Of a stretch of DNA of 64,000 bases, positions 1-43,699 are shown piece after piece. The stretch comes from Obrimoposthia wandeli. Its lineage: Eukaryota. Below the pieces are notes generated by a model. That model was not told the DNA's origin and made no database searches. It saw nothing but the letters and a program-made list of their open reading frames with translations. The stretch spans positions 62,001 to 126,000 of the forward strand of contig CDROCS010006185.1 of assembly GCA_977020255.1 (NCBI GenBank), in the 5' to 3' direction. Position 1 is the stretch's first letter. The number at the start of each line of letters is the position of its first letter. The position numbers and the translations under genes are program-made.

Positions 1-150
1 AGAAAATGGGAATAAGTATGAGTATTTGGATAGGAATGAGAATGAGAATGACAGTAAAGATGGTGATGATGGGGATGATAAGGACGACGAGGATAGTAAA
101 GATGAAGACAATAATGAATAGGAAAATTAGAATAAAAAAATAAAACGAAC

Positions 151-333
151 CAAAAAAGTCTCGTTGAACTCAAAATGTGTGGGGTACTGCTTGATAAGTT
201 GGTGAATGCAGTCGAGCCATTGTACAAACACGGGACTTCTTTCCTTGTTATCGAATGAGCTACCAAGACTGCACCGATCAACGAATTTGTGCCCGAATTG
301 GATCCATTCTTTTTCCACGAGAGTTTGAAAGCC
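151..333 (-). CDS. MTMR3/MTMR4: MTMR3/4-like exon 8 (gene continues beyond the left edge)
   Basis: TTCAG acceptor, then GFQTLVEKEWIQFGHKFVDRC...SPVFVQWLDCIHQLIKQYPTHFEFNETFL, which joins in frame to YYRTVE of exon 7. The donor at 150 (GTTCGT) is less certain. Confidence 0.92.
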
Positions 334-1653
334 CTGAATAGTGATCGATCTAATATCATACTACTACTATATCGTATTAAAATAAAGTGTTTTTATCCAT
401 TCGCATTTATAATTAATAATCAACATCTTTAAATATTGCAATTTTTAAAAAATAATATATATCTTATTAAATTTTTTAAACACAAAATGAAAAGTAATAA
501 AAAACATTCATAATTAGAACTTTAAAATAGAAATAAGAACCAAAAGAATCAAAGTAGAATAATTCAGATACTTCATAATATTTAGATTGAAGATTGTGTT
601 TCAATAAAGTATATTTTTAACTTCATTACTTAATATCGATATGTAAATAGTGGGATGAGCGTATCGAGGTGTATGCCTGGGAGGAAGTATATAAAACAAA
701 AATATTACAGCGCTTCGAGTATTCATAAAAAAGGAGTCTAACAATTCGATGTGAGACGAATTATAGCATTTAATTAGTTAACTTTTTTTTTCTTTTCATG
801 TAATTGATTTTATAAATTTTGCAATATATTGAAAAGTTAAACTTATGTTATACAAGAATGTTTTACTTATAAATAAAAGTAAATTATGAATAAGTAATTT
901 TATATGATGAGTTGTTTGCAACTAATTCCAATTCTCATATACCTAACCACCCGATTATGTTTACTTAAAATAAAAGACAATATAATAATTTAAGAAACGT
1001 TGGTAACATTAAATAGAAATAATCTTTAAATTAATAAGTTCAAAACTTTGCAATAAAAAATCTGAAAAAAATTAATTGCTATTTTTGTTGAAAAGAGAAA
1101 TTTGCATTTAGTTATTTATAGCGCATGGATTAGTGAATTTAATTAACAAAAACAGGACATAAATTCTTATCTTCTTTATTTATTTAATCTTTAATCAAAA
1201 CTTTCTGAGAACTAAGTCACAAACTTCTTTTCACAAACTGATGTACACTTTCACAAAAACGGATATTCCCAAACCTTTTACCAAACCAAACTTTAACATC
1301 ACAAAATATAGCCAGACAATCAACACGCACTCGTAAGTGTAAAAAACTATCTAACGAACACCGACCTTAAATTGGCCAATTCTCAACTTATAGCAACAAA
1401 GTACCTCAACAAGAATGGTGAGTCACGTTATGAAATATAATTTATAATAACTTTATGTTAATTTTTCCAATCGTTTTATTTTCTTTATTTAAATTTATTA
1501 GGTTTAAGAAAAATCGTACAAAAACGAATGAGTATTAGTTAATATTTGTAAATTTTATCATTTTTATTAATTATATAAAATACACTTTTCACGTTATATT
1601 TTATATATTGGATTTTTGTGATATATTGACCTATATTAAATAGAATTTTGTTA

Positions 1654-2850: not shown

Positions 2851-3650
2851 TAGTATTGGAAAAATAAATCGTGTCCATGGATTATTTTTTATCAATATAT
2901 TTTAGAATTTTAACTTATGGCTGCTTTTACTTTGAGTAGTCTCAAAAATTTTCCTCTTGGTGTGATAAATTGTAAAAAATCGAATTCAATTGTTTTAGTA
3001 AGAAAGTGAACACCATGAAAAGAACCTAAAATACATTTTAAACAAATTTTAAACAAATCAAGAGCCAATAAAAGCGTTCAATTTTTTACAGAAAATTCTG
3101 TGCATTCTAATAATGACATTTGACAGTAAGAAGTATTTATTAAAAAAACATCATTCAAGCGTCACAGGTACTTCATAAGAATTTTGTACTTTGAGTTCAC
3201 TTGTCTTAAAATAACTATAAAATTTTGTTCTAAAAGTTAAATAATTTTTTTCGCAATTTTTCTTTGGTACGCCCCAAATCTAAAAAGTTGATTAGTGGAC
3301 GAGAAAACGTTCCAATCTCAAAAGCATCTTGTGACTTTATGCTACTTTAATATTACATTTGAATACAAGCAAATTGAACGTTTTTATCCAAGTCTCCGAA
3401 TTCTATAATTGAGGTCATGCGCAATGAATGCTAGAAGAAGAAATTTTCCGTGTCATAAACAATTCCATTTACATACTAACTCTAATCGCGTATGCAAATG
3501 AAGAATTTTCCCAAACTCTTTCCTGTGAAGTTTGTTTGAACAATATAAGCAGCTTTATGATGTTCTTAGATATGATCAAATGGAATAATCTATAAAAGGT
3601 GCCCCAACACTGGTATTTGGCAACTATCAACAAACAACTCCATTTAAAGA

Positions 3651-4152
3651 TGCACAGTAAAAATAGCACCATCATTGCGCAATTATGTATTCCAAATGTT
3701 CATCGTTTTTGTCTGATAATTCTTAATTTAGAACATTATTATCAACAACACCATCGAGCCAAATATTCAATGTACATTGAAACAATGATAAAAAGTCATT
3801 GAAATGATATGACAAGTCTCACATATGAACTGTAGAGTGATTATAACTATTGATGACTTAGAATAACAATAAAAATAGAATGCACGACAAAAACAACGAT
3901 AATTACAATTACAATTCTAAGGTTTTCAAAAACTTTAAAATTTACAGAACGAACAAATACGTTTTACAGCGTGATTTGAAAGATTGGAATACAAACTAAT
4001 TACCATTTGAAATGGAGGACGTCTAAACCAACGCACATTCAAATAAGACCTGATCACCTCAATAACCCATCCCATTTATTGCATAATCATAATGAGGGGA
4101 CTCAGTCAAATGAGAAGACAATTGTTGATGTAAGCGCTGTAGTCCATTGAAT
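3651..4152. repeat. ~500-bp direct repeat, copy 1
   Basis: Near-identical to 19161-19661 (about a dozen differences by eye). Confidence 0.9.
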
Positions 4153-4756: not shown

Positions 4757-5722
4757 TGTAGATGTTTTCTATTGAAACTTAGAATCCTCGTATGGAGGCC
4801 CCAGCGTGAATTTCAGTAGCGATAGGGCTTACATATGGATGTGGCCTACCTGTTCTAATATCTGAAGGTTTTTTCTAGTCTCTGAAGGTTTTTGTGTTTA
4901 GTAAAAAAGTCTGTGTTCAGGAAAACGTGACTGTCCCTAAAACTATGGTTGTTAAGCTGGTTATAAAAACTGGTTAGGCCGAATTTGATTTCATATTCAA
5001 AAATAGTCTGGACAAAAATGGTCTGGCCACAACCAAGACAAGAAATAGGCAACAAGAAGCCGAAATAAATCAACGTCGAAGATGACTCTTTGAATGTGTC
5101 GGGGCTCAGGTTACCGTTTCGTTGGTTAATTCTCGGCCCAAATGATAGTTTTCAATTTTTTAATTTAGAAATGTTTCACACTTACTGTAATACTCAATTG
5201 GATTCTCAAAATGCTTAATCGTTTGGTTTCGAAATATTTATTACTATACTAAACGCTGATATTTAACAGAAAACGTATACAATTTTAATTCGCAGGGGCG
5301 ATATTTTCTACGCTTTAGGTTGACTAAAAGATTTTTATTTTCTCTAACGATTGATCGGAATAGTTATTTCAGTTGGTTATTATTTACTTTTACGTCTGAG
5401 TTATTCCAATGTGGGATTAATCATTCAAGATAATTCCCAAACTTCAGGACAAATTCACTATCTTTACTTCGGGATAAATTCACTATAATTACTTTAATGA
5501 TAAATTACGATCTTTAGTTTTATTCTCAGCGTTGGAGTGATATCTTCTCACGTTTTGACGAGGTAACTTCACTTTAGTATATATTCGTCTGGTAAGTTCG
5601 CGTCAATTTGTGATCTCGTTTCAGATTTCTTCGGGATTCGTTTTTATACGCTATCGATTAAAATAAACGTTTAAATAGAATAATTACTTTCGTGTTGTAC
5701 TGTAAACCGAATGTTTATCACA
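4757..5722 (+). mobile_element. LTR-like family X, copy 1
   Basis: TGT start; shared core GAAACTTAGAATCC..TGGAGGCCCC..GTGGCCTA..ATCTGAAGG; collinear with copy 3 up to ~5140; right end (ATCACA after AATAAA) is tentative. Confidence 0.6.
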
Positions 5723-6042
5723 GAAGAATGCAATGAATGTTCTGCAGAGCTTCAAATTACTGTACTACTATTATTCACCAATAATGTGGTGGAGCTGTTA
5801 ATTTCTATAAATAGCTTTTGTTCTTTTTAGATAATCTTCTTCGGCCTTTTTTCTACACTTTTATTTTCTTATATATTCATTCATATGACCTTTAAGGTCA
5901 CAATTTATTTTAAAAAACATATTTTTAATTTTAACATTTTTAACCTTCCAATATTTTGAAGGTTAAATATTTACTATAAATAAACGTTTTATTTATTTCA
6001 ATTTAGTTTTTTCCTTTATCTAACACATTGGATAATTGAAAT

Positions 6043-6570
6043 GTATAGTACCCTAAGTTCTTGTCGATAAACCGAACTTATGTATAAACCGGATACCTAA
6101 AAACGAACAAATTTTTAAAATACAATTTTATATTAATTAAGCCGGACTCATAGATAAGCCGACTAATATTTAAAAAATATGTAATTGCTTTTTTAATGTT
6201 GTAATTATTTGTTTAATTAAATAAAGTTTTTGAATTTGATTTTATTCAAAGTGAATACAAAGAGAACTCGAAAATCGTATCCCAATTATCGAAAACTAGA
6301 AGCGGTGTATAACTCTGAAACATATGGCAATGCGGCGGCTGCTAGACAGTTTCAAACAGAATATCCAGCGATGGAAAAAAGAGAAGAATGTTTTACATAC
6401 AATGACCACGAAGAAGCTCTGTCGATGGTTCCGAAAAAAGGTTTTGGCCAGAAATCGAGTCAGAAATCTGTTTTTGAAACTTTTGTCAAAAAGGCGATTA
6501 CTGGAGTCGATATCGAACACATCGAGATCCCTATTAGTTTTGACATTCCCAACAAAAAAATTAATTAAGC
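6043..6570 (+). mobile_element. pogo-like transposon 5' remnant (Brinker-type DNA-binding domain)
   Basis: RKSYPNYRKLEAVYNSETYGNAAAARQF resembles BrkDBD 'RxSYxxxFKLxV..GNxAAARxF'; repeated AACCG(G)A subterminal motifs. Confidence 0.65.
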
Positions 6571-7382
6571 ACAATTTTGTGATTGTTATTTTTTAAAGTA
6601 TCTTACGAATTAACTTGACGTCATGGGTGAAGATGAATAGAATAATTGAAATTATCACGACAATCTGAATTAAAATCGCTTTAGAGATCTGCTGCAGCAG
6701 AAATTTTGTAGACTTGTTACTTGCCGGTAACATGTAAATAAATTGGTAGAAAATATGAGGTAAATTTACAGTTTTATTATCTAAATTAAGGTCAAATTAT
6801 TTAATTTTCTTAAAAGCAATTATTGTTTACAATACTTTAAAATATAGCTTATAGAGATTTATTATGGATATATATAGTTATGTTATATACAAATCAGAAA
6901 TATCATGAATCGTCGATATCTTTAAACAATAAATGAACCTCAGCTACATCAAGGGAATTACTAATACCACACTTTTTAAATGACAACTATTTCTGGTTTC
7001 ACTCTAACTCACGACTTTTAACCAATTTTATCTGTTATACTACTGTTATTAGAATTTCCCTCTGTTTAGTTTTCCACCAGTGGAATTTCTGCGCATTGAA
7101 CACAAGGAAATTTCTTTGCACATTCTTTTGGAAACAGTTATTTGTAAATAATTTCGAGGTTTTATAATGATTTGAAGTATTTTGGAAATATTTTATAAGT
7201 AGTCTATCACTATATTGTAAAACGCAAAATAATTCGTAAGAAGATTGTAAAATATCTGAATACAATTCATAGCTTTTAAGATTATTTTTAAGCATAGGTT
7301 ATAAGATTTTACTTTTTTGTGTAACCGGATGATTGGTCAAAATCCCAATTGACAGAAAAAAATGGCACAAAAAAGAAGAATA

Positions 7383-7647
7383 CAGTAGGTGGAAGGATGG
7401 AGTCTAAGCCACTTGACCCCCCCCCCCTAAAGGGTGTCACTCCATAAGGATGTCACATCATAAAAGATGTCTTGCCACACCATAAGGGTATATGTTGCCT
7501 CACCTTCGGTGACCCAACATATACCCTTATGGTATGGCAAGGACACCTTTTATGGTGTGACACCCTTATGGTGACACCCAGGAGGGGAGGCGGGGAGGCG
7601 GGGAGGGAGGGGAGGGGTCAAGTGGCTTAGACTCATCCTTCCTACTG
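7383..7647. repeat. Left terminal self-palindromic MITE-like module
   Basis: TA|CAGTAGG...CCTACTG|TA with nested inverted segments around a central GGGTATATGTTG..CAACATATACCC stem. Confidence 0.85.
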
Positions 7648-7680
7648 TATACCGCCTACTATGGTCGTCCATAGTTTAAA

Positions 7681-7895
7681 GGGTAAAGTGGCTTAGTCTC
7701 CACCCTTCTTTTGAGATATATCACTATGAAAGGGTAAAGTGGCTTAGTCTCACCCTTCTTTTGAGATATACCACTATGAAAGGGTAAAGTGGCTTAGTCT
7801 CCACCCATCTTTTTGAGATATACCACTATGAAAGGGTAAAGTGGCTTAGTCTCCATCCATCTTTTAGTGATCTAGTCTCCACCCTTCTTTTTTTG
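7681..7895. repeat. ~51-bp subterminal repeats x4 (mirrored at ~18300-18525)
   Basis: GGGTAAAGTGGCTTAGTCTCCACCCTTC at 7681, 7732, 7782 and 7834; a variant of the TIR motif. Confidence 0.9.
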
Positions 7896-8429
7896 ATCTA
7901 GTCCATAATGAAAATTTATGATAAAGTTCACACTTAACAATTAAGAATGTATGACGTAATCATACACACACTATTCTATGTGAAAATCAAGGCTAAAGTT
8001 CACTCTTATCAGTTAAGGAATGTGGTTTTTAACACACACACTATTCTATGTGAAAGTTTAGATCAAATTATTTTCCTAGGTTTTCACATTTATAGAATTA
8101 TGATAAAATTTCTTTAAATAACTTCAATTATATATTAAAATAAAATAAAATAAGAAAGAAGTCAGAGAATAATACAAAATTAAACACATTTATTATGTAA
8201 TTTCATAATATCATCTTCAAACTTAAGTGAATAACATTTACAAAGTAAGAAAGTCCATTCTTTATACATTCTTTTTGTTTCAACGACTAAGTTACAACGG
8301 AATTAATAGAAAATTAGTAAAAATATTAATTTATTTGAATATTTGAATGAGAGTTTGAATAAATGAGAGGTAGAATGAATGTAAATGAATAAAATTATGC
8401 ATGCAAGTATGAATGTCATTTACAAGTAA

Positions 8430-11400
8430 GAGGGTTTAGCAAGTGAATGTAATTTAAAAATAAGAGTGTCGATAGTTTGATTGAATGCAAGTGTAATTTA
8501 GACTATAAGTAAATTAAAATAGAGTTTTTGTTGAATAAATTATAGTTAGATTGAATGCAAGTATGACGAGCAAGTGATTGATAGTTTGAATTTTCAATAC
8601 AAGTAAGTGGGTTTAGCAAGTGAATGTAATTTTAAAAAATAAGAGTGTCGATAGTTTGATTGAATGCAAGTGTAATTTAGACTATAAGTAAGTTAAAATA
8701 GAGTTTTTGTTGAATAAATTATAGTTAGATTGAATGCAAGTATGACGAGCAAGTGATTGATAGTTTGAATTTTCAATACAAGTAAGTGGGTTTAGCAAGT
8801 GAATGTAATTTTAAAAAATAAGAGTGTCGATAGTTTGATTGAATGCAAGTATGACGAGCAAGTGATTGATAGTTTGAATTTTCAATACAAGTAAGTGGGT
8901 TTAGCAAGTGAATGTAATTTTAAAAAATAAGTTTAGTTTGATTGAATGCAAGTGTAATTTAGACTAGGGCAAATTAAAATAGAGAATAAAATTAGTAGTT
9001 AGATTGAATGCAAGTATGACGAGCAAGTGATTGATAGTTTGGTAATTAGTAATGTAATTTTAAAAAAATAAGAGTGTCGATAGTTTGATTGAATGCAAGT
9101 AATTAGACTATAAGTAAATTAAAATAGAGTTTTGGAATAAATTAGTAGTTAGATTGAATGCAAGTATGACGAGCAAGTGTTTGATAGTTTCGAATGTAAG
9201 TTTTAGCAAGTGAATGTAATTTTAAAAAAATAAGAGTGTCGATAGCTTGATTGAATGCAAGTGTAATTTAGACTATAAGTAAATTAAAATAGAGTTTTTG
9301 TTGAAATAAATTATAGTTAGATTGAATGCGAGCAAGTATGACGAGCAAGTATAGTTTGAATTTTCAATACAAGCAAGTGGGGTTTAAAGTGAATGGGACT
9401 TTAATTTTAAAAAATAGAAAGTCGATAGTTTGATTGAATGCAAGTGTAGACTATAAGTAAATTAAAATAGAGTTTTGTTGAATAAATTATAGTTAGATTG
9501 AATGCAAGTATGACGCAAGTGATTGATAGTTTGAATTTTCAATACAAGTAAGTGGGTTTAGCAAGTAGTGTCGATAGTTTTACTGAATGTGTGCAAGTGA
9601 ATGTAATTTAAAAAAGAGTTTTTGTTGAATAAATTATAGTTAGATTGAATGCAAGTACGACGAGCAAGTGATTGATAGTTTGAATTTTCAAGTAAGTGGG
9701 TTTAGCATTGTAATAAAAATAAGAGTGTCGATAGTTTGATTGAATGCAAGTGTAATTTAGACTATAAGGGGGCAAATTAAAATAGAGTTTTGTTGAATAA
9801 ATTATAGTTAGATTGAATGCAAGTATGACGAGCAAGTGATTGATAGTTTGAATTTTCAATACAAGTAAGTGGGTTTAGCAAGTGAATGTAATTTTAAAAA
9901 ATAAGAGTGTCGATAGTTTGATTGAATGCAAGTGTAATTTAAGATATAAGTAAATTAAAATAGAGTTTTTGTTGAATAAATTATAGTTAGATTGAATGCA
10001 AGTATGACGAGCAAGTGTTTGATAGTTTGAATTTTCAATACAAGTAAGTGGGTTTAGCAAGTGAATGTAATTTTAAAAAATAAGAGTGTCGATAGTTTGA
10101 TTGAATGCAAGTGTAATTTAGACTATAAGTAAAATAAAATAGAGTTTTTTGTTGAATAAATTATAGTTGATTGAATGCAAGTATGACGAGCAAGTGATTG
10201 ATAGTTTGAATTTTCAATACAGTAAGTGGGTTTAGCAAGTGAATGTAATTTTAAAAATAAGAGTGTCGATAGTTTGATTGAATATGAGTGTAATTTAGAC
10301 TATATAGTAAATTAAAATAGAGTTTTTGTTGAATAAATTATAGTTAGATTGAATGCAAAGTATGACGAAACAGAGTGATTGATAGTTTGAATTTTCAATA
10401 CAAGTAAGTGGGTTTAGCAAGTGAATGTAATTTTAAAAAATAAGAGTGTCACGATAGTTTACAGTGATTGAATAAAGTGTAATTTAGACCTATAAGTAAA
10501 TTAAAATAGAGTTTTTGTTGAATAAATTATAGTTAGATTGAATGCAAGTGACGAAAACAAGTGATTAGATAGTTTGAATTTTCAATACAAATAATGAGGA
10601 TGGGTTTAGCAAGTGTATGTTTTTTAAAAATAAGAGTGTCGATAGTTTGATTGAATGCAAGTGTAAGTGTAATTTATACTATAAGTAAATTAAAATAGAG
10701 TCGTTGTTGAATAAATTATAGTTAAATTGAATGCAAGTATGACGAGGAAACAGTGATTGATAGTTGATAATTTTTCAATACAAGTAAGTGGGTTTAGCAA
10801 GTAGAATTTTTAAAAAACAAAGAGTGTCGTAGTTTGATTGAATGCAAGTGATACTAATTTGAACTATAAATAAAATTAAAAAAAGTTTTTGTGGAGCAAA
10901 TTTAGTTAGATTGAATGCAAGTATGACGAGCAAGTGTTTGATAGTTTGAATTTTAATACAAGTAAGTGGGTTTTAAAGTGAATGTAATTTTTAAAAAATA
11001 AGAGTGTCGATAGTTTGATTGAATACAGAATGTAATTTAGACTATAAATAAATTAAAATGAAGTTTTGATTGAATAAATTATATGTAGTTAGGTTGAATG
11101 CAAGTTATGATGACGAGCAAGTGATTGATAGTTTGAATTTTTCAATGTATTAGTTGGGTTTAACAAGTGAATGTAATTTTTAAAAAATAAGAGTGTCTCG
11201 ATAATTTTGATTGAATGCAAGTGCATTTTTAGATATAAGTAAATTAAAAATAGAGTTTTTGTTGAATAAATTATATAGTTGAATTGAATGCAAGTATGAC
11301 GAGCAAGTGATTGAATAGTTGAATTTTCAATACAAATTAAAGTGGGTTTAGCAAGTGAATATGAAGTTTTTTAAAAAATAAGAGTGTCGATAGTTTGATT
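8430..11400. repeat. Satellite A, ~179-bp unit, ~16-17 copies
   Basis: Period read from anchors at 8581/8760; copies become noisier toward 11.4 kb. Confidence 0.95.
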
Positions 11401-11689
11401 TTTTAAATTACTTGATATTTTTGCCATTGTCGTTTATTATAATATGAATATTCAATTTATTTCTTCAAAAATTCATTTTTTATATGTTAAATAATATTTC
11501 TTTATTATTGTGGTTTTATCAAGTGATTTTAACTTTAAACTATAAAAATATTTTAATTATAAAGTTAGTTGCTGTACCGCCCACTGTATATAACATAAAT
11601 TTCAAATATAAAGTACTATTAAGTTTATTATTTCGAATAGTAAATGATTTTTCGAGTTATTTAATTTTGTTTACTAGACGTTCGAAAAT

Positions 11690-14600
11690 TTACTTGTAAA
11701 CTACAATATTTATTTGTTGTTGTATATATTCAGTTGAAAATGTTGTAGTTATTACTTTAATATAATTTTCAACAAAAAACTTCAAGTAGTTTACTTATTA
11801 ATCATAAGTTTAATGTTTTGTATCATAAATTGACTTGTTAACATAATTTCTTTTGTTATAATTTCAATTTAATATGTTGTCACTTATTAATTTAATATAA
11901 TTTAAAAAAAAAAACTTCAAGTAGTTTACTTATTAAACATAAGTTTAATGTTTTGTACAATAAATTGACTTGTAAACATAATTTATTTTGATATATTTTC
12001 AATTTAATATGTTGTAAGTTATTACTTTTAATATAATTCTATAACAAAAACTTCAAGTAGTTTACTTATTAAACATAAGTTTAATGTTTTGTACAATAAA
12101 TTGACTTGTAAACATAATTTATTTTTGATATATTTTCAATTTAATATGTTGTAAGTTATTACTTTAATATAGTTTACAACAAAAGCTTATAATGTTACTT
12201 GTAAACTATAATATTTATTTGTTGTTGTATATATTTAGTTTAAATGTTGTAAGTTATTACTTTAATATAATTTACAACAAAAACTTCAAGTAGTTTACTT
12301 ATTAAACATAAGTTTAATGTTTTGTACAATAAATTGACTTGTAAACATAATTTATTTTTGATATATTTTCAATTTAATATGTAGTAAGTTATTACTTTAA
12401 TATAATTTTCAACAAAAACTTCAAGTAGTTTACTTATTAAACATAAGTTTAATGTTTTGTACAATAAATTGACTTGTAAACATAATTTATTTGATATATT
12501 TTCAATTTAATATGTTGTAAGTTATTACTTTAATATAATTTACAACAAAAAAAACTTCAAGTAGTTTACTTATTAAACATAAGTTTAATGTTTTGTACAA
12601 TAAATTGACTTGTAAACATAATTTATTTTGATATATTTTCAATTTAATATGTTGTAAGTTATTACTTTAATATAATTTACAACAAAAAACTTCAAGTTGT
12701 TTACTTATTAAACATAAGTTTAATGTTTTGTACAATAAATTGACTTGTAAACATAATTTATTTTGATATATTTTCAATTTAATATGTTGTAAGTTATTAC
12801 TTTAATATAATTTACAACAAAAACTTCAAGTAGTTTACTTATAAACCATAAGTTTAATGTTTTGTACAATAAATTTACTTGTATATATAATTTATTTTGA
12901 TATATTTTTTTCAATTTAATATGTTGTAAGTTATTACTTTAATATAATTTACAACAAAACTTCTAGTAATTTACTTGTAAACTACAATATTTATTTGTTG
13001 TTGTATATATTTAGTTTAAAATGTTGTTAGTTATTACTTTAATATAATTTTCAACAAAAACTTCGAGTAGTTTACTTATTAAACATAAGTTTAATGTTTT
13101 GTACAATAAATTGACTTGTTAACATAATATATTTATGCATATATTAACTTTAATATGTTGTAACTTATTACTTTAATATAATTTTCAACAAAAACTTCAA
13201 GTAGTTTACTTATTAATCATAAGTTTAATGTTTTGTACAATAATTTGACTTGTAAACATAATTTATTTTGATATATTTTCAATTTAATATGTTGTAAGTT
13301 ATTACTTTAATATAATTTACAACAAAAACTTCAAGTAATTTACTTGTAAACTACAATATTTATTTTGTTGTTGTATATATTCAGTTTAAAATGTTGTAAG
13401 TTAATACTTTAATATAATTTACAACCAAATCTTCAAGTAATTTACTCAATAATCATAATATTAATGATTTGATCAATAAATTGACTTGTAAACATAATAT
13501 AATTACGTGCATATTTTCAATTTAATATATTGTAGTTATTACTATAATATTACATTACATAAAAAAAGTAATTGATAGTTTACTATCGTTTACAATAAAT
13601 TTATGCATATATTCACTTTAATATGTTGTAAGTTATTACTTTATTATAATTTTCAACAAAAAAAAACTTCAAGTAATTGTTTACTTATTAAACATAAGTT
13701 TAATGTTTTTTTGTACAATAAATTGATTTGTATTTAACATACTTTATTTTGGTATATTTTCAATTTATATGTTGTAAGTTATTACTTTAATATAATTTAC
13801 AACCAAAACTTCAAGAAATTTACTTAATAATCATAATTTTAATGATTTGATCAATAAATTGTCTTGTAAACATAATATAATTTGCATATTTTCAATTTAA
13901 CACGTTGTAAGTTAATACTGTAATATTTCATTACATAAAAAAGTAATTCATAGCTGGTTTACTGTCGTTTACTATAAATTTACTTGTAAACATAATATAT
14001 TTATGCATTATTCACTTTAATACGTTTTAAGTTATTAGAATTTGTGTTCTTGTATTCAATGATTAACTTTTATTAAACTATTATATAACATTGACACTCT
14101 TATTTTTAAAAATTGACTTGTAAACATAATTTATTTTGATATATTTTCAATTTAATATGTTGTAAGTTATTACTTTAATATAATTTACAACAAAAACTTC
14201 TAGTAATTTACTTGTAAACTACAATATTTATTTGTTGTTGCATATATTTAGTTTAAAATGTTGTAAGTTATTACTTTAATATAATTTTCAACAAAAATTT
14301 CAAATGGTTACTTATTAAACATAAGTTTAATGTTTTGTACAATAAATTGACTTGTAAACATAATTTATTTTTGATATATTTTTCAAATTTAATATGTTGT
14401 AAGTTATTATACACAATATAATTTACAACAAAAACTTCAAGTAGTTTACTTATTAAACATAAGTTTAATGTTTTGTACAATAAATTGACTTGTAAACATA
14501 ATTTATTTTGATATATTTTCAATTTAATATGTTGTAAGTTATTACTAGTATATATTTAGTTTAAAATGTTGTAAGTTATTACTTTAATATAATTTTCAAC

Positions 14601-16760
14601 AAAAACTTCAAGTAGTTTACTTATTAAACATAAGTTTAATGTTTTGTACAATAAATTGACTTGTAAACACTTTTGCTGATTTTGATATATTTTCAATTTA
14701 ATATGTTGAATTATTGCTAATATAATTTACAACAAAAAACAAATGTTTACTTATTAAACTTAAGTTTAATGTTTTGTATCAAGACTTTAAACATATTTAT
14801 TTTGATATATTTTCAATTTAATATGTTGTAAGTTATTACTTTAATATAATTTACAACAAAAACTTCAAGTAGTTTACTTATTAAACATAAGTTTAATGTT
14901 TTGTACAATAAATTGACTTGTAAACATAATTTATTTTGATATATTTTCAATTTAATATGTTGTAAGTTATTACTTTAATATAATTTACAACAAAAAACTT
15001 CAAGTTGTTTACTTATTAAACATAAGTTTAATGTTTTGTACAATAAATTGACTTGTAAACATAATTTATTTTGATATTTTTTAATTTTATTATATTTGTT
15101 GTAGTTATTACTAAATATAATTTACAACAAAACTTTAAGTTGTTTCACTTATTAAACCTAAGTTTAATGTTTTGTACAATAAATTGACTTGTAAACATAT
15201 ATTTTTTTGATATATTTTCAATTTAATATATTGTAAGCTATTACTTTAATATAATTTACAATTAAAACTTCACTTCAAAGTTGTTTACTTATTAAACTTA
15301 AGTTTAATGTTTTTACACAATAAATTGACTTGTAAACATAATTTATTTTGATATATTTTCAATTTAATATGTTGTAAGTTATTATTACTTTAATATAATT
15401 TACAACAAAAAACTTCTAAGTAATTTACTTATTAAACTTAAGTTTAATGTTTTGTACAATAAATTGACTTGTAAACATAATTTATTTTGATATATTTTCA
15501 ATTTATATGTTGTAAGTTAGTACTTTAATATAATTTACAACAAAAAACTTCAAGTTGTTTACTTATTAAACATAAGTTTAATGTTTTGTACAATAAATTG
15601 ACTTGTAAACATAATTTATTTTGATATATTTTCAATTTAATATGTTGTAAGTTATTACTTTAATATAATTTACAACAAAAACTTCAAGTTGTTTACTTAT
15701 TAAACATAAGTTGTTTTGTACAATAAATTGACTTCTAATTTATTTTGATATATTTTCAATTTAATATATTTGTAAGTTATTACTATTGCTAAAAACTTCA
15801 TAAGTTGCTTTACTTATTAAACATAAGTTTAATGTTTTGTACAATAAATTGACTTGTAAACATAATTTATTTTGATATATTTTCAATTTAATATGTTGTA
15901 AGTTATTACTTTAATATAATTTACAACAAAACTTCAAGTAGTTTACTTATTAAACTTAAGTTTAATGTTTTGTACAATAAATTGACTTGTAAACATAATT
16001 TATTTTGATATATTTTCAATTTAATATGTTGTAAGTTATTACTTTAATATAATTTACAACAAAAAACTTCAATTATTTTACTTATTAAACTTAAGTTTAA
16101 TGTTTTGTACAATAAATTGACTTGTAAACATAATTTATTTTGATATATTTTCAATTTAATATGTTGTAAGTTATTACTTTAATATAATTTACAACAAAAA
16201 CTTCAAGTTGTTTACTTATTAAACATAAGTTTAATGTTTTGTACAATAAATTGACTTGTAAACATAATTTATTTTGATATATTTTCAATTTAATATGTTG
16301 TAAGTTATTACTTTAATATAATTTACAACAAAAACTTCAAGTAATTTACTTGTAAACTACAATATTTATTTTGTTGTTGTATATATTCAGTTTAAAATGT
16401 TGTAAGTTAATACTTTAATATAATTTACAACCAAATCTTCAAGTAATTTACTTAATAATCATAATATTAATGATTTGATCAATAAATTGACTTGTAAACA
16501 TAATATAATTTGCATATTTTCAATTTAATATATTGTAAGTTATTACTATAATATTACATTACATAAAAAAGTAATTGATAGTTTACTATCGTTTACAATA
16601 AATTTATGCATATATTCACTTTAATATGTTGTAAGTTATTACTTTATTATAATTTTCAACAAAAAAACTTCAAGTAGTTTACTTATTAAACATAAGTTTA
16701 ATGTTTTGTACAATAAATTGACTTGTAAACATAATATATTTATGCATTATTCACTTTAAT
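11690..16760. repeat. Satellite B, ~134-bp very AT-rich unit with recurring variant blocks
   Basis: AGTTATTACT anchors at 15901, 16034, 16169 and 16303. Confidence 0.95.
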
Positions 16761-16831
16761 ACGTTTTAAGTTATTAGAATTTGTGTTCTTGTATTCAATG
16801 ATTAACTTTTATTAAACTATTATATAACATT

Positions 16832-17775
16832 GACACTCTTATTTTTAAAAAATTACATTCACTTGCTAAACCCACTTACTTGTATTGAAAATTCAAACTA
16901 TCAATCACTTGCTCGTCATACTTGCATTCAATCTAACTATAATTTATTCAACAAAAACTCTATTTTAATTTACTTATAGTCTAAATTACACTTGCATTCA
17001 ATCAAACTATCGACACTCTTTTTTTTTAAAATTACATTCACTTGCTAAACCCACTTACTTGTATTGAAAATTCAAACTATCAATCTTGCTCGTCATACTT
17101 GCATTCAATCTAACTATAATTTATTCAACGAAAACTCTATTTTAATTTACTTATAGTCTAAATTACACTTGCATTCAATCAAACTATCGACACTCTTATT
17201 TTTTAAAATTACATTCACTTGCTAAACCCACGTACTTGTATTGAAAATTCAAACTATCAATCACTTGCTCGTCATACTTGCATTCAATCTAACTATAATT
17301 TATTCAACAAAAACTCTATTTTGATTTACTTATAGTCTAAATTACACTTGCATTCAATCAAACTATCGACACTCTTATTTTTTAAAATTACATTCACTTG
17401 CTAAACCCACTTACTTGTATTGAAAATTCAAACTATCAAACACTTGCTCGTCATACTTGCATTCAATCTAACTATAATTTATTCAACAAAAAACTCTATT
17501 TTAATTTACTTATAGTCTAAATTACACTTGCATTCAATCAAACTATCGACACTCTTATTTTTAAAATTACATTCACTTGCTAAACCCACTTACTTGTATT
17601 GAAAATTCAAACTATCAATCACTTGCTCGTCATACTTGCATTCAATCTAACTATAATTTATTCAACAAAAACTCTATTTTAATTTACTTATAGTCTAAAT
17701 TACACTTGCATTCAATCAAACTATCGACACTCTTATTTTTAAATTACATTCACTTGCTAAACCCTCTTACTTGTA
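16832..17775. repeat. Satellite A, inverted, ~5 copies
   Basis: ACTTGCTAAA anchors at 16861, 17040, 17217, 17396, 17575 and 17752. Confidence 0.95.
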
Positions 17776-18542
17776 AATGACATTCATACTTGCATGCATA
17801 ATTTTATTCATTTACATTCATTCTACCTCTCATTTATTCAAACTCTCATTCAAATATTCAAATAAATTAATATTTTACTAATTTTCTATTAATTCCGTTG
17901 TAACTTAGTCGTTGAAACGAAAAGAATGTATAAAGAATGGACTTTCTTACTTTGTAAATGTTATTCACTTAAGTTTGAAGATGATATTATGAAATTACAT
18001 AATAAATGTGTTTAATTTTGTATTATTCTCTGACTTCTTTCTTATTTTATTTTAATATATAATTGAAGTTATTTAAAGAAATTTTATCATAATTCTATAA
18101 ATGTGAAAAACCTAGGAAAATAATTTGATCTAAACTTTCACATAGAATAGTGTGTGTGTTAAAAACCACATTCCTTAACTGATAAGAGTGAACTTTAGCC
18201 TTGATTTTCACATAGAATAGTGTGTGTATGATTACGTCATACATTCTTAATTGTTAAGTGTGAACTTTATCATAAATTTTCATTATGGACTAGATCACAA
18301 AAAGAAGGGTGGAGACTAGATCACTAAAAGATGGATGGAGACTAAGCCACTTTACCCTTTCATAGTGATATAACTCAAAAAGAAGGGTGGAGACTAAGCC
18401 ACTTTACCCTTTCATAGTGGTATATCTCAAAAAGAAGGGTGGAGACTAAGCCACTTTACCCTTTCATAGTGATATATCTCAAAAAGAAGGGTGGAGACTA
18501 AGCCACTTTACCCTTTAAACTATGGACGACCATAGTAGTATA

Positions 18543-18798
18543 TCAAGGAAGGATGGAGTCTAAGCCACTTGACCCTCCCCTCCCTCCCGCCTCCGCCTCC
18601 CTCTAAAGGTGTCACTCCATAAGGGTGTCACACCATAAAAGGTGTCTTGCCATACCATAAGGGTATATGTTGGGTCACCGAAGGTGAGGCAACATATACC
18701 CTTATGGTGTGGCAAGATCTTTGATGTGACATCCTTATGGAGTGACACCCTTTAGGGGGGGGGGTCAAGTGGCTTAGACTCCATCCTTCCACCTACTG
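18543..18798. repeat. Right terminal self-palindromic module (inverted copy)
   Basis: Reverse complement of 7383-7647 with few differences. Confidence 0.85.
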
Positions 18799-19160
18799 AA
18801 TACAAATGAATTTTTATCCAGAGACTGAATAGTATTAAATAGAGTTATAAGAAAATATTTGGGTATTGAAGAAAAATAGAAATGTTAATTTATACAATGT
18901 ACAGTGCAGAATTAGTGAATTTATGCCTTCAGAAAGAGCGAAATCCAAACTTAAGGGTTTGCATATATTATTGTCAAACATAGGGCAGCATGGGAAAAGA
19001 AGTAAATGTGTTGTGGGCGAAAAGCTACAATGGAGTAATGGTAATATGTTTATAATTCCTCAATACAATAACATCAAGATTTTACCAGGACATCAACAGT
19101 CCCTAAATACATTGCAAACTGTTACTCTCAAGATGATTGAACCACTTAGAAGTATATGTA

Positions 19161-19661
19161 TGTACAGTAAAAATAGCACCATCATTGCGCAATGATTTAT
19201 TCCAAATGTTCATCGTTTTTGTCTGATAATTCTTAATTTAGAACATTATTATCTACAACACCATCGAGCCAAATATTCAATGTACATTGAAACAATGATA
19301 AAAAGTCATTGAAATGATATGACAAGTCTCACATATGAACTGTAGAACGATTATAACTATTGATGACTTAGAATAACAATAAAAATAGAATGCACGAAAA
19401 AACAACGATAATTACAATTACAATTCTAACGTTTTCAGAAACTTTAAAATTTACAGAACGAACAAATACGTTTTACAGCGTGATTTGAAAGATTGGAATA
19501 CAAACTAATTACCATTTGAAATGGAGGACGTCTAAACCAACGCACATTCAAATAAGGCCTGATCACCTCAATAACCCATCCCATTTATTGCATAATCATA
19601 ATGAGGATACTCAGTCAAAGGAGAAGACAATTGTTGATGTAAGCGCTGTAGTCCATTGAAT
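19161..19661. repeat. ~500-bp direct repeat, copy 2
   Basis: Near-identical to 3651-4152. Confidence 0.9.
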
Positions 19662-22981: not shown

Positions 22982-23177
22982 CTCCACTGTTCGATAGTAG
23001 CTGTCGAGAAGTATCTGCGCGAGTGAGGTCAGCTGCGGAGTCCGGTCCCAGCCGTCAGAACAGTGAATGATGACGGAGCGTCCGTCGTCGTCGACTGTTT
23101 TGGCAACATCGGCGGCTGACTTAAGCAGTTTGCTCAGGTACTTCAGCCAGTACGAGTTCTCGAATGCTGTCAGCCAA
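22982..23177 (-). CDS. MTMR3/MTMR4: MTMR3/4-like exon 7 (catalytic HCSDGWDRT motif intact)
   Basis: WLTAFENSYWLKYL...VIIHCSDGWDRTPQLTSLAQILLDSYYRTVE; DRTPQ is typical of MTMR3/4; CX5R is intact, so it is predicted to be active. Confidence 0.97.
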
Positions 23178-23353
23178 CTGCAACAGTCAATGGTTTGGAA
23201 CAATCAGTTTGGTAGCAGCTGTGGTCCACCTCGTCACATGTGCACATAAGACTCTTCATTGACATTTTTCTCGGCATACGGCAACAAAAACTACGGAATC
23301 TACGGCTTAATTCATTAACGCGCGATGGTCTATTCGGACACTCAGGTACTCAC

Positions 23354-31459: not shown

Positions 31460-33830
31460 GTTTAAGTAAGCTTTACGAACACTAAAACTAAACCTTAATT
31501 AAACATTAATGAAATTTATGAACCGAAAACTGAACACAAATATTTGTAAGATTTGAGTCTTTCATACGATGTAAACCCATAAATTTAATAAAAATTATTT
31601 TATAAATTTTATTTTCTGGAATGCATCTTGTGTCAAAATTATTTACAAAATTTGTCAACGGGTTACTTTTAGTTACATTCAACATATATTTAATATAAAT
31701 ATGTTATATATTTATTTATCAAATTGTCTAAAATTAAGGATAACAATTTAGTTCTCATTGAATGATAGCCAATTTAAGAATGACAATATAGTTCTGATTG
31801 AATGATAGCCAATTTAAGAATGACAATATAGTTCTAATTGAATGTTAGCCAATTTTAGAATAACATATAGTTTTGATTGAATTATTGCAAATTTTGAAAT
31901 AACAATATAGTTCTGATTTCAATTAAATATCATTAGTTAATTTGATTTTCTATCAGTTTTGGTAACGATGATAAAATAATAATATTTCTGAAAATCAAAA
32001 TGGACTACTGAGTCTGCAGTATTTAATAGGGACAGGGTAGCAAGAAGCGCACACATGTATAGATAGAGAGGAAAATATAGGTATATTCCTTGCATCAACC
32101 AAAATTGCAAGCAAATATCAATAACATCGGGCTGTTGATGCAGATATCAGCAGTATCAGGAGAGTAAGGTGAAAAAAGATATATGTTGCTGTTGTTGCAT
32201 TGCTGGACCGAGACAGAGATTTACACGCATGGTCTGCAAAATTGAGGCAGCACAAATAATGTCAGTTCATTAGAGGATGTTTGTAGGTGAATTGCGACGA
32301 ACAAGACAGATGAGGCGGCATGTCACAGGAGACAAAGTGACAAAAGAGGGGAGACCGTAGCTGTTGTTACCACCGCTGTCATGGTTGTTGGTCGTCAGGC
32401 AGAGAGAGGAAGACGAGGTCGGGAGGGAGATTCCATCAAACCACAATCTCATCCGCTGTATTTTCTTAGCGGAATAACTTTTGTGGTCAAAATTGCCACT
32501 TTTATAAAGCCACTTTCCCGATGAGCCTGGAAGGCGAAACGGGGTTTTTACCCCGTCGGAGGCTAAAAAAGAATACCTCCCCGATTGTGGGGATTTCAGT
32601 AATGTCAATTTAAATTGACTTAATTAATTTTTAAATTCCAACAAATAAGCTTTTTGAATAAATTAGTTTTTAATGTCAAATATTTAAGACATTCAAAATT
32701 TATATAAAATTATAAAATGAAGTTAATAATATATATAAAAAATTATAATAAACTATTTAAAAATGTATATCATTTTAGTAAAAAAGTTTGACTGACAATA
32801 ATTTTATTAATAAAGCTAAATGATAAAATATATTTTAATTTTACTAAATCCTAAATTATTATATACATATGAATAATCTAATTTTAATAATTATATTGTA
32901 TTTGACCGATTTAACTTTAATTTTTGGAATAAGATAATAATGAAATTTGAGTTAAATAGAGAATTTTAGATTTGAAATCAAGTTAAGGTGTAGATTTTAA
33001 AAGTTTAATTTATTTGGGAATTGAAAATTAAATCGTAAAATAAAAAATATTAAAACAATTTTCTTTTTATCATTATAATACCAATAATTCGTTTAAATTT
33101 TAAGTCACATGAAAATATATTCAGAACTTTAAATGTTGATAATTAAAATTATTTTATTGTATATATATTTTTATTTTACAGGTATATTTAATGTTATTCT
33201 TTTAAATGGTTGTGTATTAAAATGAATGAAAATGTAAGAGACTTGAGGATGTATCTTAATTACTATTTTTTAATACTTAAAGCTAATTATATGATTCAAG
33301 TAAGCTTTGCGAACACTAAAATTAAACTTGTTTAGCATTTATAAAATTTTTGAACCGTAAACTGAACACAAAATATTTTCATCTTATATATGATGTACAC
33401 AAATAAATCTAATAATTTTTTTATAAAATTGCTTTCAGAAATGCAATTTTATGTCAAAATTAGTCAATAGGTTACTATTTAATTACATTCAACAGATATT
33501 TATTATAAATACTTAAAAATTAACTTTTTGAATAAATACATTTTAAATGTAAATATTTTAGATATTCTAACTTTAAATAAATTTTTTAAAATAAGTTAAA
33601 AATTCGTATTAAAAAGCATTATAATATTTAATAAATATTATTTACGATAGTATTTATTTTAATATTATTTAAAAATGTATGTCATATTTGTAAATGTTTG
33701 CCTAACAATAATTTTATTAATAAAACTAAATAATAAAATATTTAAAAAAAGTTATAATTATAAACATATGATTAATGTAAATTTATTAATTATTTTTGTT
33801 TGACCGATTTGACATAAATTTTGAACAGTG
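31460..33830. repeat. Diverged duplication: 31460-31710 plus 32640-32920 correspond to contiguous 33295-33830
   Basis: Shared anchors CGAACACTAAAA..AACTGAACACAAA..TTACATTCAACA and TTTTTGAATAAA..ACAATAATTTTATTAATAAA..TTTGACCGATTT. Confidence 0.7.
31757..31920. repeat. 40-bp tandem repeat x4 containing CCAAT
   Basis: AATGATAGCCAAT at 31761 and 31801, variant at 31841. Confidence 0.85.
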
Positions 33831-43360: not shown

Positions 43361-43699
43361 AGAAATAATAGATAGCAAATATATATTTTTTTTCGCAATT
43401 TGTGCGAATATATCGAATTTAATATAATTTTGACCATCAATCTGCATATGCATCTTGTTTATTATATACATCTGCACATCTTCCCATTGTAATATGAGTC
43501 ATAATATCGTATTGAGTTAGGTAATACCCGATTCACACGTTTACATATATTCATCTGCGTATGTCAAACACGGAATATGTAATAATTACCTACCCGTACT
43601 TTAAATTTTCAAGCATTATTGTAGTCTATTTATTTAGTTAAAATTTTTGAGAATACAGTTATATATTTTACAAATTGTTTGTGAAAATACAATGCCCAG

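What the first reader, a model, noticed from the sequence alone, without database searches (positions are those of the whole stretch)
7383..18798. 11.4-kb foldback element built from satellites inside a myotubularin intron
Seen: symmetric architecture of palindromic cap (265 bp), 4x51-bp TIR-like repeats, ~0.5-kb unique arm and 179-bp satellite, then a 134-bp satellite loop, then the same modules inverted. Arms are asymmetric (~17 vs ~5 satellite-A units). The flanks carry a direct repeat (AATA, or GAATAC with a 1-bp boundary shift). No transposase is present. Established: Drosophila FB and Galileo have modular tandem-repeat arms. Inference: a non-autonomous DNA transposon that moves satellite arrays, with CAGT..ACTG ends suggesting a Tc1/mariner-type partner although the TSD is not a plain TA. 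Both arms lie in one pre-mRNA intron, so a ~2-kb dsRNA stem could form.
Basis: partly seen in the sequence, partly recalled or inferred. Interest (0 to 1): 0.75.

Follow-up and report, generated by a model that had tools for sequence, protein, structure and literature searches.

The report
Gene-less satellite-filled Maverick/Polinton foldback derivative
The 11.4-kb inverted-repeat element in this myotubularin intron is a real, recently inserted, protein-less derivative of a virus-like Maverick/Polinton transposon, and is one of about 2,500 such copies that carry two satellite DNAs around the genome, probably using the enzymes of intact relatives.

Summary
Window 7384-18797 is a foldback element: a 265-bp palindromic cap, 51-bp repeats, a 555-bp unique arm and a 179-bp satellite (16.6 units against 5.3) on each side of a one-way 134-bp satellite core. 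It has no reading frame above 94 codons and lies in a 22.6-kb myotubularin intron.

The target duplication is 6 bp (GAATAC) and the ends are AGTAGG...CCTACT. The "CAGT/ACTG" ends are duplication bases, so this is not Tc1/mariner, FB or Galileo.

The same ends (cap, 51-bp repeats, about 830 bp) bound 12.1-kb Maverick/Polinton copies in this genome. These encode a protein-primed polymerase, an rve integrase, a packaging ATPase, a protease and a capsid-like protein. Nine of ten complete copies examined have perfect, different 6-bp duplications.

Both arms of the gene-less form carry sequence specific to the polymerase-side end, so the element is an inverted duplication of one end, like a copy-back defective genome.

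Whole-genome counts give 5,112 gene-less arms and 2,359 polymerase-side Polinton ends. Read contigs leave the window exactly at the left junction, which suggests an allele without the insertion.

The scan had noted similar gene-less foldbacks elsewhere in this genome (s1-208399, s1-208440, s1-254723). I found the helper for this family.

The parts
7378..7383 (.). left copy of the 6-bp target-site duplication GAATAC
7384..18797 (.). whole gene-less foldback element (11,414 bp), ends AGTAGG...CCTACT
7384..7648 (+). left terminal cap, a 265-bp near-perfect palindrome. Its outer 34 nt are identical to the termini of the Polinton copy on C75 and of the gene-less copies on C2939 and C651 (one difference in the Polinton copy on C965)
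7678..7865 (+). left 51/52-bp subterminal repeats (3.7 units). Each holds a variant of the terminal motif and is a possible integrase-binding site (inferred)
7866..8420 (+). left unique arm. Its first ~300 bp are homologous to the Polinton terminal inverted repeat (which contains a 72-bp repeat), followed by Polinton left-end-specific sequence
8163..8280 (+). left arm: sequence specific to the polymerase-side end of the Polinton (C75 element 955-1004 and 1211-1288, the latter inside the 3' end of the polymerase gene), with a ~205-bp deletion junction at 8203-8231
8421..11400 (+). 179-bp satellite A, left array, 16.6 units, G-rich strand (GC skew about +0.6)
11401..11722 (.). 322-bp linker between satellite A and satellite B
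11723..16744 (+). 134/135-bp satellite B core, about 36 units in one orientation, with a 134-bp irregular gap at 14006-14139
16745..16828 (.). 84-bp linker, conserved in length in other copies
16829..17775 (-). 179-bp satellite A, right array, 5.3 units, inverted
17776..18325 (-). right unique arm, inverted. It carries the same polymerase-side-specific fragment at 17915-17993
18326..18576 (-). right 51/52-bp subterminal repeats (3.7 units by Tandem Repeats Finder over 18326-18516; 4.9 by BLAST over this span)
18546..18797 (-). right terminal cap (252 bp palindrome)
18798..18803 (.). right copy of the 6-bp target-site duplication GAATAC
139..342 (-). myotubularin-related exon (PF06602 positions 263-332), downstream of the host intron
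22982..23191 (-). myotubularin-related exon (PF06602 positions 196-265), upstream of the host intron

Best explanation
The element is a non-autonomous, protein-less derivative of a Maverick/Polinton virus-like transposon. Each arm begins with the complete terminal inverted repeat of the resident 12.1-kb Polinton: a palindromic cap, 51-bp repeats and a 72-bp repeat region. Each arm then continues into sequence found only at the polymerase-side end of that Polinton, including about 80 bp of the polymerase gene's 3' end. The element is therefore an inverted duplication of one genome end around a satellite core, the architecture of a copy-back (snap-back) defective genome. The genes have been replaced by two satellites. 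The 179-bp satellite A is part of the inverted arms, and the 134-bp satellite B forms the turnaround. Because it keeps the exact termini, it is most likely recognised in trans by the rve integrase of intact Polinton copies, which makes the 6-bp target duplication. It is probably also copied from its ends by their protein-primed polymerase. Shown: the structure, the homology of the ends, the one-end origin of both arms, the 6-bp duplications at many loci, the copy numbers and the lack of coding capacity. Inferred: mobilisation and replication in trans, the copy-back origin, and formation of a long RNA hairpin in the host pre-mRNA.
For: Nine of ten complete copies examined have perfect, different 6-bp duplications (GAATAC, GAATCG, TGTGGC, AATCGA, TATGGA, GACGAT, TTGATC, AATCAA, GAAATG). 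These include two gene-bearing copies and one chimera. The copies C75:589702-601818 and C965:34610-46814 share the window's cap, 51-bp repeats and about 830 bp of each arm at 94-96%. They encode a 1,214-aa protein with family-B protein-primed polymerase motifs (YADFE, NLRGYD, DVNNLYG, KLKNVSLYGK, GDTDS). Its nearest Atlas clusters score 0.98 and carry DNA_pol_B_2 plus Endonuclease_7. They also encode an rve integrase with a chromodomain (40.4 bits, above the cut-off), an A32-like ATPase, a weak adenain-like protease match, a TBP-like protein and a 406-aa protein nearest to double-jelly-roll-like clusters. Both arms of the gene-less copies align to the Polinton's left end beyond its 942-bp inverted repeat (C75 943-1004, and 1211-1288 after a deletion) and not to its right end. 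The module order is the same in the window copy, C2939, C651 and C69, while unit numbers differ. Exact-pattern counts over the whole assembly give the gene-less-specific deletion junction 2,555 + 2,557 times, the Polinton left junction 1,163 + 1,196 times and the terminal 27-mer 1,916 + 1,845 times, with reversed-pattern controls at 0. Of 29 sampled ends, 21 are gene-less type and 8 are Polinton type, all with different flanks. The family is young: unique arms are 98.4% identical between copies and 99.7-100% between the two arms of one copy. The window's arms differ at 4 of 893 aligned positions. Published Maverick features are a 6-bp TSD and (AGT)2...(ACT)2 end motifs (PMC8097293), and a 6-bp TSD with a long TIR (PMC3014272).
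Against: No experiment or read evidence shows mobilisation in trans, and activity of the integrase and polymerase is inferred from open frames and motifs only. Pfam does not call DNA_pol_B_2 on the polymerase and no solved structure matches by sequence. The capsid assignment rests on the language-model atlas alone. One of ten complete copies (C169:103406-113769) has no direct duplication, and its flanks are reverse complements of each other. About 60 of the first 100 listed gene-less arms have no opposite partner within 15 kb. The origin of both satellites is unknown, since neither has a significant match in the Polinton. The copy-back origin could be mimicked by gene conversion between ends.
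Confidence: 0.85

Rival explanations
1. This is the first reader's model: a foldback transposon of the FB/Galileo kind, or a non-autonomous partner of a Tc1/mariner-type transposase, moved by cut-and-paste.
For: It has long modular inverted arms made of tandem repeats and no coding capacity. The bases next to the ends in this one copy read C and G.
Against: The target duplication is 6 bp in nine copies, never TA, 7 bp or 9 bp. The neighbouring bases vary between copies, so CAGT/ACTG is not part of the end. The termini and subterminal repeats are those of a Polinton with an rve integrase.
Confidence: 0.03
2. It is an assembly fold-back artefact: the inverted symmetry was created by the assembler or by chimeric long reads, not by biology.
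For: One related copy (C169) is symmetric even in its flanks for at least 20 bp, as a fold-back artefact or a true palindromic duplication would be. Satellites sit at several contig ends. No long read could be laid across the window copy.
Against: The window copy has asymmetric arms, a one-way core and a direct (not inverted) 6-bp flank repeat. The same architecture occurs at independent loci with different duplications. Junction counts run to thousands.
Confidence: 0.02
3. It is a dead relic rather than a mobilised unit: each gene-less copy arose separately by internal deletion and in-situ satellite growth inside a full Polinton insertion, so satellites were never moved.
For: Unit numbers of all repeats differ between copies and between arms. 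A chimera exists that keeps the right half of the Polinton genes (C138).
Against: The same deletion junction (29-mer) occurs 5,112 times. The same module order and an 84-85-bp linker recur. The satellites are absent from the two full Polintons examined. The gene-less arms carry left-end-specific sequence on both sides, which an internal deletion cannot produce.
Confidence: 0.05
4. It has the same ancestry but spreads mainly as a packaged, helper-dependent defective virus genome, with the satellites acting as stuffer to reach a packageable length, rather than by purely intracellular transposition.
For: Four gene-less copies with young termini measure 10.1-11.4 kb against 12.1-12.2 kb for the helper. 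Their satellite A (2.4-5.8 kb) and satellite B (2.5-5.3 kb) contents vary inversely, with a combined total of 7.8-8.9 kb. Among the first 100 perfect termini, about 10 pairs span 10.3-11.8 kb and about 15 span 12.0-12.7 kb. Both arms keep the polymerase-side subterminal segment, the position where adenoviruses keep their packaging domain (PMC5033970).
Against: Pairs of 6.8-9.4 kb and 13-24 kb also exist. An older subfamily is 5-7 kb. Only four copies were measured, no virions are known here, and shared recent ancestry may explain the similar sizes.
Confidence: 0.2

Closest known systems
Maverick/Polinton self-synthesising transposons (polintoviruses) and their non-autonomous derivatives
   Same: It has a 6-bp target duplication, long terminal inverted repeats and an AGT-type end motif (AGTAGG here, against (AGT)2 in vertebrate Mavericks; PMC8097293). 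Its termini are shared with copies encoding a protein-primed polymerase, an rve integrase, an ATPase, a protease and a capsid-like protein.
   Different: It has no genes at all. Its arms are 1.5 to over 3 kb, made of a palindromic cap, tandem repeats and a satellite. Both arms derive from one genome end. Its copy number (about 2,500) at least equals that of the gene-bearing form. Published surveys that I could read describe few or no non-autonomous Polintons (for example Anolis, PMC3014272). That Repbase lists some is my own recollection.
Drosophila Foldback (FB) and Galileo elements
   Same: Both have long inverted arms built from tandem repeats, a variable central part, no coding capacity in most copies, and arm lengths that vary between copies.
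   Different: FB makes a 9-bp and Galileo a 7-bp duplication (my own knowledge), against 6 bp here. There is no sequence relation, and the partner here is an integrase-bearing virus-like element.
Copy-back / incomplete genomes of protein-primed viruses (adenovirus incomplete particles holding left-end DNA)
   Same: Both ends derive from the same genome end and the subterminal region next to the repeat is kept. In adenovirus that region holds the packaging domain, and incomplete particles hold left-end DNA (PMC5033970).
   Different: The element here is integrated in chromosomes with target duplications and filled with satellites. Packaging and interference are untested. That adenovirus defective genomes include inverted left-end duplications is my recollection of Daniell 1976, which I could not read.
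Satellite-carrying non-autonomous DNA transposons (for example Helentron/Helitron-associated satellites of oysters, PMC8268682)
   Same: A mobile element disperses short satellite arrays across the genome.
   Different: The transposition chemistry differs (HUH rolling-circle there, integrase here) and those elements have no inverted-arm architecture.
Polymerase-less Maverick derivatives
   Same: Both depend on a helper. One chimera here (C138:296657-306934, 10.3 kb, TSD GAAATG) has a gene-less satellite arm on one side and keeps Polinton positions 5259-11415 on the other.
   Different: The window element has lost every gene.

Membership tests
Maverick/Polinton (as non-autonomous member) | 6-bp target-site duplication | tested here: met
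   GAATAC flanks the window copy. Nine of ten complete copies have perfect, different 6-bp duplications. The literature criterion is in PMC8097293 and PMC3014272.
Maverick/Polinton (as non-autonomous member) | long terminal inverted repeats ending 5'-AG...CT-3' (AGT-type end motif) | tested here: met
   The ends are AGTAGG...CCTACT and the arms run 1.47 kb in register. The helper's inverted repeat is 942 bp. The end motifs are described in PMC8097293.
Maverick/Polinton (as non-autonomous member) | encodes a protein-primed family-B polymerase and an rve integrase | tested here: not met
   The window element has no open frame above 94 codons and only an ~80-bp remnant of the polymerase 3' end in each arm. 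It therefore cannot be an autonomous member.
Maverick/Polinton (as non-autonomous member) | termini shared with an autonomous element of the same genome | tested here: met
   The first 34 nt are identical to the C75 Polinton copy (one difference in C965), and about 830 bp of each arm are 94-96% identical to C75 and C965. Those copies encode the polymerase motifs, rve integrase, ATPase and protease.
Maverick/Polinton (as non-autonomous member) | helper carries the virion module (double jelly-roll capsid, packaging ATPase, adenain-like protease) | tested here: inconclusive
   The A32-like ATPase scores 26 bits, above the cut-off, although no single stretch passed on its own. Peptidase_C5 scores 17.7 bits, below the cut-off. 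The capsid is assigned only by atlas similarity, 0.98 to DJR-like clusters.
Drosophila Foldback / Galileo | modular inverted arms of tandem repeats | tested here: met
Drosophila Foldback / Galileo | 9-bp (FB) or 7-bp (Galileo) target duplication and an FB/P-type transposase partner | tested here: not met
   The duplication is 6 bp in every copy with a direct repeat, and the partner found is a Polinton. The TSD lengths of FB and Galileo are from my own knowledge.
Tc1/mariner | TA target duplication and conserved CAGT-type ends | tested here: not met
   The duplication is 6 bp and not TA. The C and G next to the ends are duplication bases and differ between copies.
Copy-back defective genome of a protein-primed virus | both termini derived from one end of the parental genome | tested here: met
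   Both arms align to Polinton left-end-specific sequence beyond the inverted repeat, and neither aligns to the right-end-specific sequence.
Copy-back defective genome of a protein-primed virus | replicated and packaged only with a helper; interferes with it | not testable with these tools
   There are no particle, extrachromosomal or expression data. Only one DNA sample was available, as contigs.

The most novel reading that the evidence does not exclude
The gene-less foldbacks are 'gutless' defective genomes of a Maverick. They would be copy-back products of the protein-primed polymerase that keep the replication, integration and packaging signals of one end. They would use satellite DNA as stuffer to stay near the helper's packageable length, and be spread (possibly also between individuals) inside helper capsids. 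That would make a virus-like element a vehicle that seeds satellite arrays genome-wide. It would also make intronic copies a built-in source of hairpin RNA against the helper's own termini.
Probability: 0.2. Interest if true: 0.8.

Novelty: new variant of a known kind. Interest (0 to 1): 0.6.

Why it matters
Mavericks/Polintons are usually low-copy in animals, and their non-autonomous forms are barely described. Here a protein-less derivative has reached about 2,500 copies, alongside about 2,400 polymerase-side ends of the parent. Together they are of the order of a few per cent of a 1.35-Gb genome (my estimate from copy counts and typical lengths).

The derivative shows a concrete route by which two satellite families are dispersed to thousands of euchromatic and intronic sites.

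Its one-ended, inverted-duplication architecture is the first sequence-level hint I know of that these elements generate copy-back defective genomes as protein-primed viruses do. That bears on the open question of whether Mavericks replicate as linear extrachromosomal genomes.

It also gives a natural test set for integrase end recognition (one terminal motif plus 3-12 subterminal copies). Thousands of intronic long hairpins may additionally feed small-RNA silencing of the parent element.

Tried and rejected
Tc1/mariner and FB/Galileo membership were rejected on the target duplication and on the identity of the ends.

An assembly artefact was rejected for the window copy.

I looked for a second haplotype contig with an empty site by searching both flanks in the assembly. 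None exists. Only a 503-bp local duplicate appeared.

Reads: only four runs of one sample were available, kept as short contigs, with no RNA run. One call was allowed, on 5400-8400. Contigs of three runs align to the left flank up to 7384 (7377 in X3) and then run on for 423, 194 and 252 letters unlike the element. An empty allele would read GAATAC followed by A, and so would match through 7384. I could not see those letters or lay the right flank, so the empty allele is probable, not shown. The summed depths (about 53 on the flank, 0.7-2 million on the element) are not copy numbers.

Satellites A and B and both linkers have no convincing match inside the Polinton. The tblastx hits other than the polymerase 3' fragment are short and carry inflated linked E-values.

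Several searches found nothing. Rfam gave no match. Solved structures gave no match for the polymerase. PHROGs matched only the endonuclease VII insert. The literature searches found no description of a satellite-filled or foldback Polinton derivative. Kapitonov and Jurka 2006, Krupovic and Koonin 2015 and Daniell 1976 are not held.

A test of arm homogenisation (private variants shared by both arms of a copy) gave too few sites to decide: 0, 2 and 3 shared against 4, 1 and 0 single.

Only ten complete copies were therefore read.

The large protein searches were not used. Family scans, motifs and the atlas sufficed.

Full report
**1. The observation**

The longest in-register inverted match runs from 7384-8850 to 18797-17346 (1,476 aligned positions, 97% identity).

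Reading inward, each arm has four parts.

- A terminal cap (265 bp left, 252 bp right) that is itself a near-perfect palindrome. It folds as single-stranded DNA at -101.8 kcal/mol, z = -18.
- 3.7 units of a 51/52-bp repeat.
- A 555-bp non-satellite arm.
- A 179-bp satellite, with 16.6 units on the left and 5.3 inverted units on the right.

The centre (11723-16744) is a 134/135-bp satellite of about 36 units in a single orientation. Satellite A has a strong strand bias (GC skew about +0.6 on the left, -0.6 on the right).

The element has no open frame longer than 94 codons and no Rfam match. There are no N runs in the window.

Myotubularin-related exons lie on the minus strand at 139-342 and 22982-23191, with contiguous profile coordinates (263-332 and 196-265). 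The element therefore sits in one 22.6-kb intron.

**2. Ends and target duplication**

The left flank ends in GAATAC and the right flank begins with GAATAC. The element itself starts AGTAGGTGG and ends CCACCTACT. In other copies the neighbouring bases differ.

**3. It is a family**

The cap plus 30 bp finds at least 2,230 first-look candidates in the 1.35-Gb assembly, and several hits form inverted pairs 10-12 kb apart. I read ten complete copies.

| Copy | Length (bp) | Flanking 6-mers | Type |
|---|---|---|---|
| Window | 11,414 | GAATAC | gene-less |
| C2939 | 11,029 | GAATCG | gene-less |
| C651 | 10,119 | TGTGGC | gene-less |
| C69 | 10,324 | AATCAA | gene-less |
| C10 (L045) | 5,956 | GACGAT | gene-less, older subfamily |
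| C42 (L046) | 2,669 | TTGATC | mini derivative |
| C138 | 10,278 | GAAATG | chimera |
| C75 | 12,117 | AATCGA | gene-bearing |
| C965 | 12,205 | TATGGA | gene-bearing |
| C169 | 10,364 | none direct | gene-less modules (longest frame 113 codons); flanks are reverse complements |

Nine of the ten have perfect, mutually different 6-bp direct repeats. In the tenth (C169) the 20-bp flanks are reverse complements of each other, so its symmetry extends beyond the element.

The window copy, C2939, C651 and C69 have the same module order, but repeat numbers differ.

- 51-bp units: 3-8.
- Satellite A: 4-17 units on one side and 5-20 on the other.
- Satellite B: 19-40 units.

**4. The partner**

C75 and C965 are 98.6% identical to each other. 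They share the window's cap, 51-bp repeats and about 830 bp of each arm at 94-96%, but they carry genes.

- A 1,214-aa minus-strand protein has the exonuclease and polymerase motifs of protein-primed family-B polymerases. It has an endonuclease VII insert, and its nearest Atlas clusters score 0.98 and carry DNA_pol_B_2. In C965 this frame is split into 790 and 467 codons.
- A TBP-like protein, an A32-like ATPase, an rve integrase with a weak chromodomain match and a weak adenain-like protease match.
- A 406-aa protein nearest to double-jelly-roll-like clusters.

With the 6-bp duplication, the long inverted repeats and the AGT-type end motif, this is a Maverick/Polinton as defined in the literature (PMC8097293; PMC3014272; PMC4028283). 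Here the helper is identified for this family.

**5. One-ended origin**

The Polinton's own inverted repeat is 942 bp. Both arms of the gene-less copies continue past that point into sequence present only at the polymerase-side end. They match C75 943-1004 and then, after a deletion of about 205 bp, C75 1211-1288, which lies inside the 3' end of the polymerase gene. They do not match the other end.

An internal deletion of a Polinton cannot put left-end-specific sequence at both ends. An inverted duplication of one end can.

In an older subfamily (about 7% divergent) the inverted arms run through satellite A and a further ~770 bp right up to the satellite B array. The whole element is thus a palindrome around satellite B.

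This is the architecture of copy-back defective genomes. I infer strand switching during protein-primed, strand-displacement replication as the origin. Gene conversion between ends is the alternative.

**6. Abundance and age**

Exact-pattern counts over the whole assembly (one mismatch allowed, reversed-pattern controls 0) are as follows.

| Pattern | Forward | Reverse |
|---|---|---|
| Gene-less-specific deletion junction | 2,555 | 2,557 |
| Polinton left junction | 1,163 | 1,196 |
| Terminal 27-mer | 1,916 | 1,845 |

Of 29 sampled ends, 21 are gene-less type and 8 are Polinton type, each in a different flank. Satellite B has at least 1,210 candidates at 98-99% identity, and many lie beside caps found independently.

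Unique arms are 98.4% identical between gene-less copies and 99.7-100% between the two arms of one copy. The window's arms differ at 4 of 893 aligned positions. The family and this insertion are therefore young.

**7. Reads**

Only one DNA sample (four runs, stored as short contigs) holds the locus, and no RNA run does. Contigs of three runs follow the left flank and stop matching exactly at 7384 (7377 in one). They then continue for 423, 194 and 252 letters that do not fit the element, although the element was part of the laid stretch.

An allele without the insertion would read GAATAC followed by A, and would therefore match through 7384. This points to an empty allele in the sample. I could not see the letters or lay the right flank, so it stays probable. 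No alternative haplotype contig exists in the assembly.

Loose ends at 8209 read into the polymerase gene. This shows that Polinton-type and gene-less-type arms coexist in the reads.

**8. How it most likely works**

*Shown:* the element keeps the exact termini, the subterminal repeats (each 51-bp unit holds a variant of the terminal motif) and a polymerase-side subterminal segment of a resident Polinton. It has no genes. It has inserted at thousands of sites with 6-bp duplications.

*Inferred:* the Polinton integrase recognises these ends in trans and inserts the element. The protein-primed polymerase copies it from its ends. The arms of a copy start out identical because one is templated on the other.

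*Further inference:* transcription of the host gene would yield a pre-mRNA in which about 1.5 kb of near-perfect complementarity, plus satellite A, can pair. No RNA data exist to test this.

**9. A size hint**

Four gene-less copies with young termini measure 10.1-11.4 kb against 12.1-12.2 kb for the helper. Their satellite A content is 2.4-5.8 kb and their satellite B content 2.5-5.3 kb. The two vary inversely, so the combined total stays at 7.8-8.9 kb.

The first 100 perfect termini form 34 pairs.

- About 15 span 12.0-12.7 kb. All eight of these that could be cross-checked are Polinton type.
- About 10 span 10.3-11.8 kb.
- Five span 6.8-9.4 kb.
- Four span 13-24 kb.
- One spans 0.2 kb.

This fits, but does not prove, a length constraint such as packaging. 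In adenoviruses the packaging domain lies beside the left repeat, and incomplete particles hold left-end DNA (PMC5033970).

**10. Comparison and novelty**

The element works like a foldback element in form and like a non-autonomous or defective Polinton in mechanism. It is a non-autonomous member of the Maverick/Polinton superfamily and not a member of FB, Galileo or Tc1/mariner.

I found no paper describing a gene-less, satellite-filled, one-ended Polinton derivative, or one amplified to thousands of copies. The library is incomplete, and Repbase entries for non-autonomous Polintons exist to my knowledge. I therefore rate it a new variant of a known kind.

**11. Limits and rules**

These are virus-like proviruses of an animal. 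I compared and described natural copies only. A mobilisation experiment that would need an active complete helper is referred.

Noticed in passing
window 3650-4152 and 19160-19661: A 503-bp direct duplicate (97.4% identity) lies on either side of the element in the same intron. These are the only two copies in the assembly. It is not adjacent to the element ends (3.2 kb from the left end, 0.36 kb from the right).
   Followed up: partly
window 60327-60629: A TBP-like reading frame is 36% identical at protein level to the TBP-like gene of the Polinton (L040:435-896). No Polinton terminus occurs elsewhere in the window. The scan also noted this as s1-247244.
   Followed up: partly
G000:C169:103386-113789 (L053+L054): A 10.4-kb copy has 20-bp flanks that are exact reverse complements of each other instead of a direct 6-bp repeat. 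The palindrome extends beyond the element, so this is either a true fold-back duplication or an assembly fold-back.
   Followed up: partly
G000:C138:296637-306954 (L051+L052): A 10.3-kb chimera with TSD GAAATG has a gene-less arm with satellites A and B on one side, joined to Polinton positions 5259-11415 (98.4%) and the right end on the other. It is a polymerase-less intermediate.
   Followed up: partly
G000:C117:97404-136373 and 172553-187124: Six Polinton left junctions lie on one strand about every 7.8 kb, and three more lie about every 7.3 kb. These are tandem arrays of a Polinton-derived unit.
   Followed up: no
G000:C272:26351-26562: A solo 212-bp cap has perfect terminal motifs facing outward on both sides, like a miniature element made of the palindrome alone.
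   Followed up: no
L044:5445-5574 and L048:282-400: In two older copies one cap is cut exactly at the centre of its palindrome, as if broken at a hairpin tip. Other caps carry internal deletions.
   Followed up: partly
G000:C2886:23167-24066, 32886-33785, 42465-43364: Three intron-less myotubularin-like open frames of 485 codons repeat every ~9.6 kb (PF06602, E about 1e-67). A similar 461-codon frame lies on C213.
   Followed up: no
L039:1188-4829 (minus strand), residues 526-567: The Polinton polymerase carries an endonuclease VII / HNH-type insert between its exonuclease and polymerase parts. The nearest atlas clusters share it.
   Followed up: partly
G000:C3:555883-580083: A pair of perfect termini lies 24.2 kb apart, with gene-less junctions just inside both. 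This is either a very long copy or one with nested insertions.
   Followed up: no
G000:C3292:253701-261677 and several contig ends (C2075, C3886, C5247, C106, C4183): Satellite A is spread over a ~8-kb stretch on C3292 and lies at contig ends. Longer arrays may exist, and they may break the assembly.
   Followed up: no
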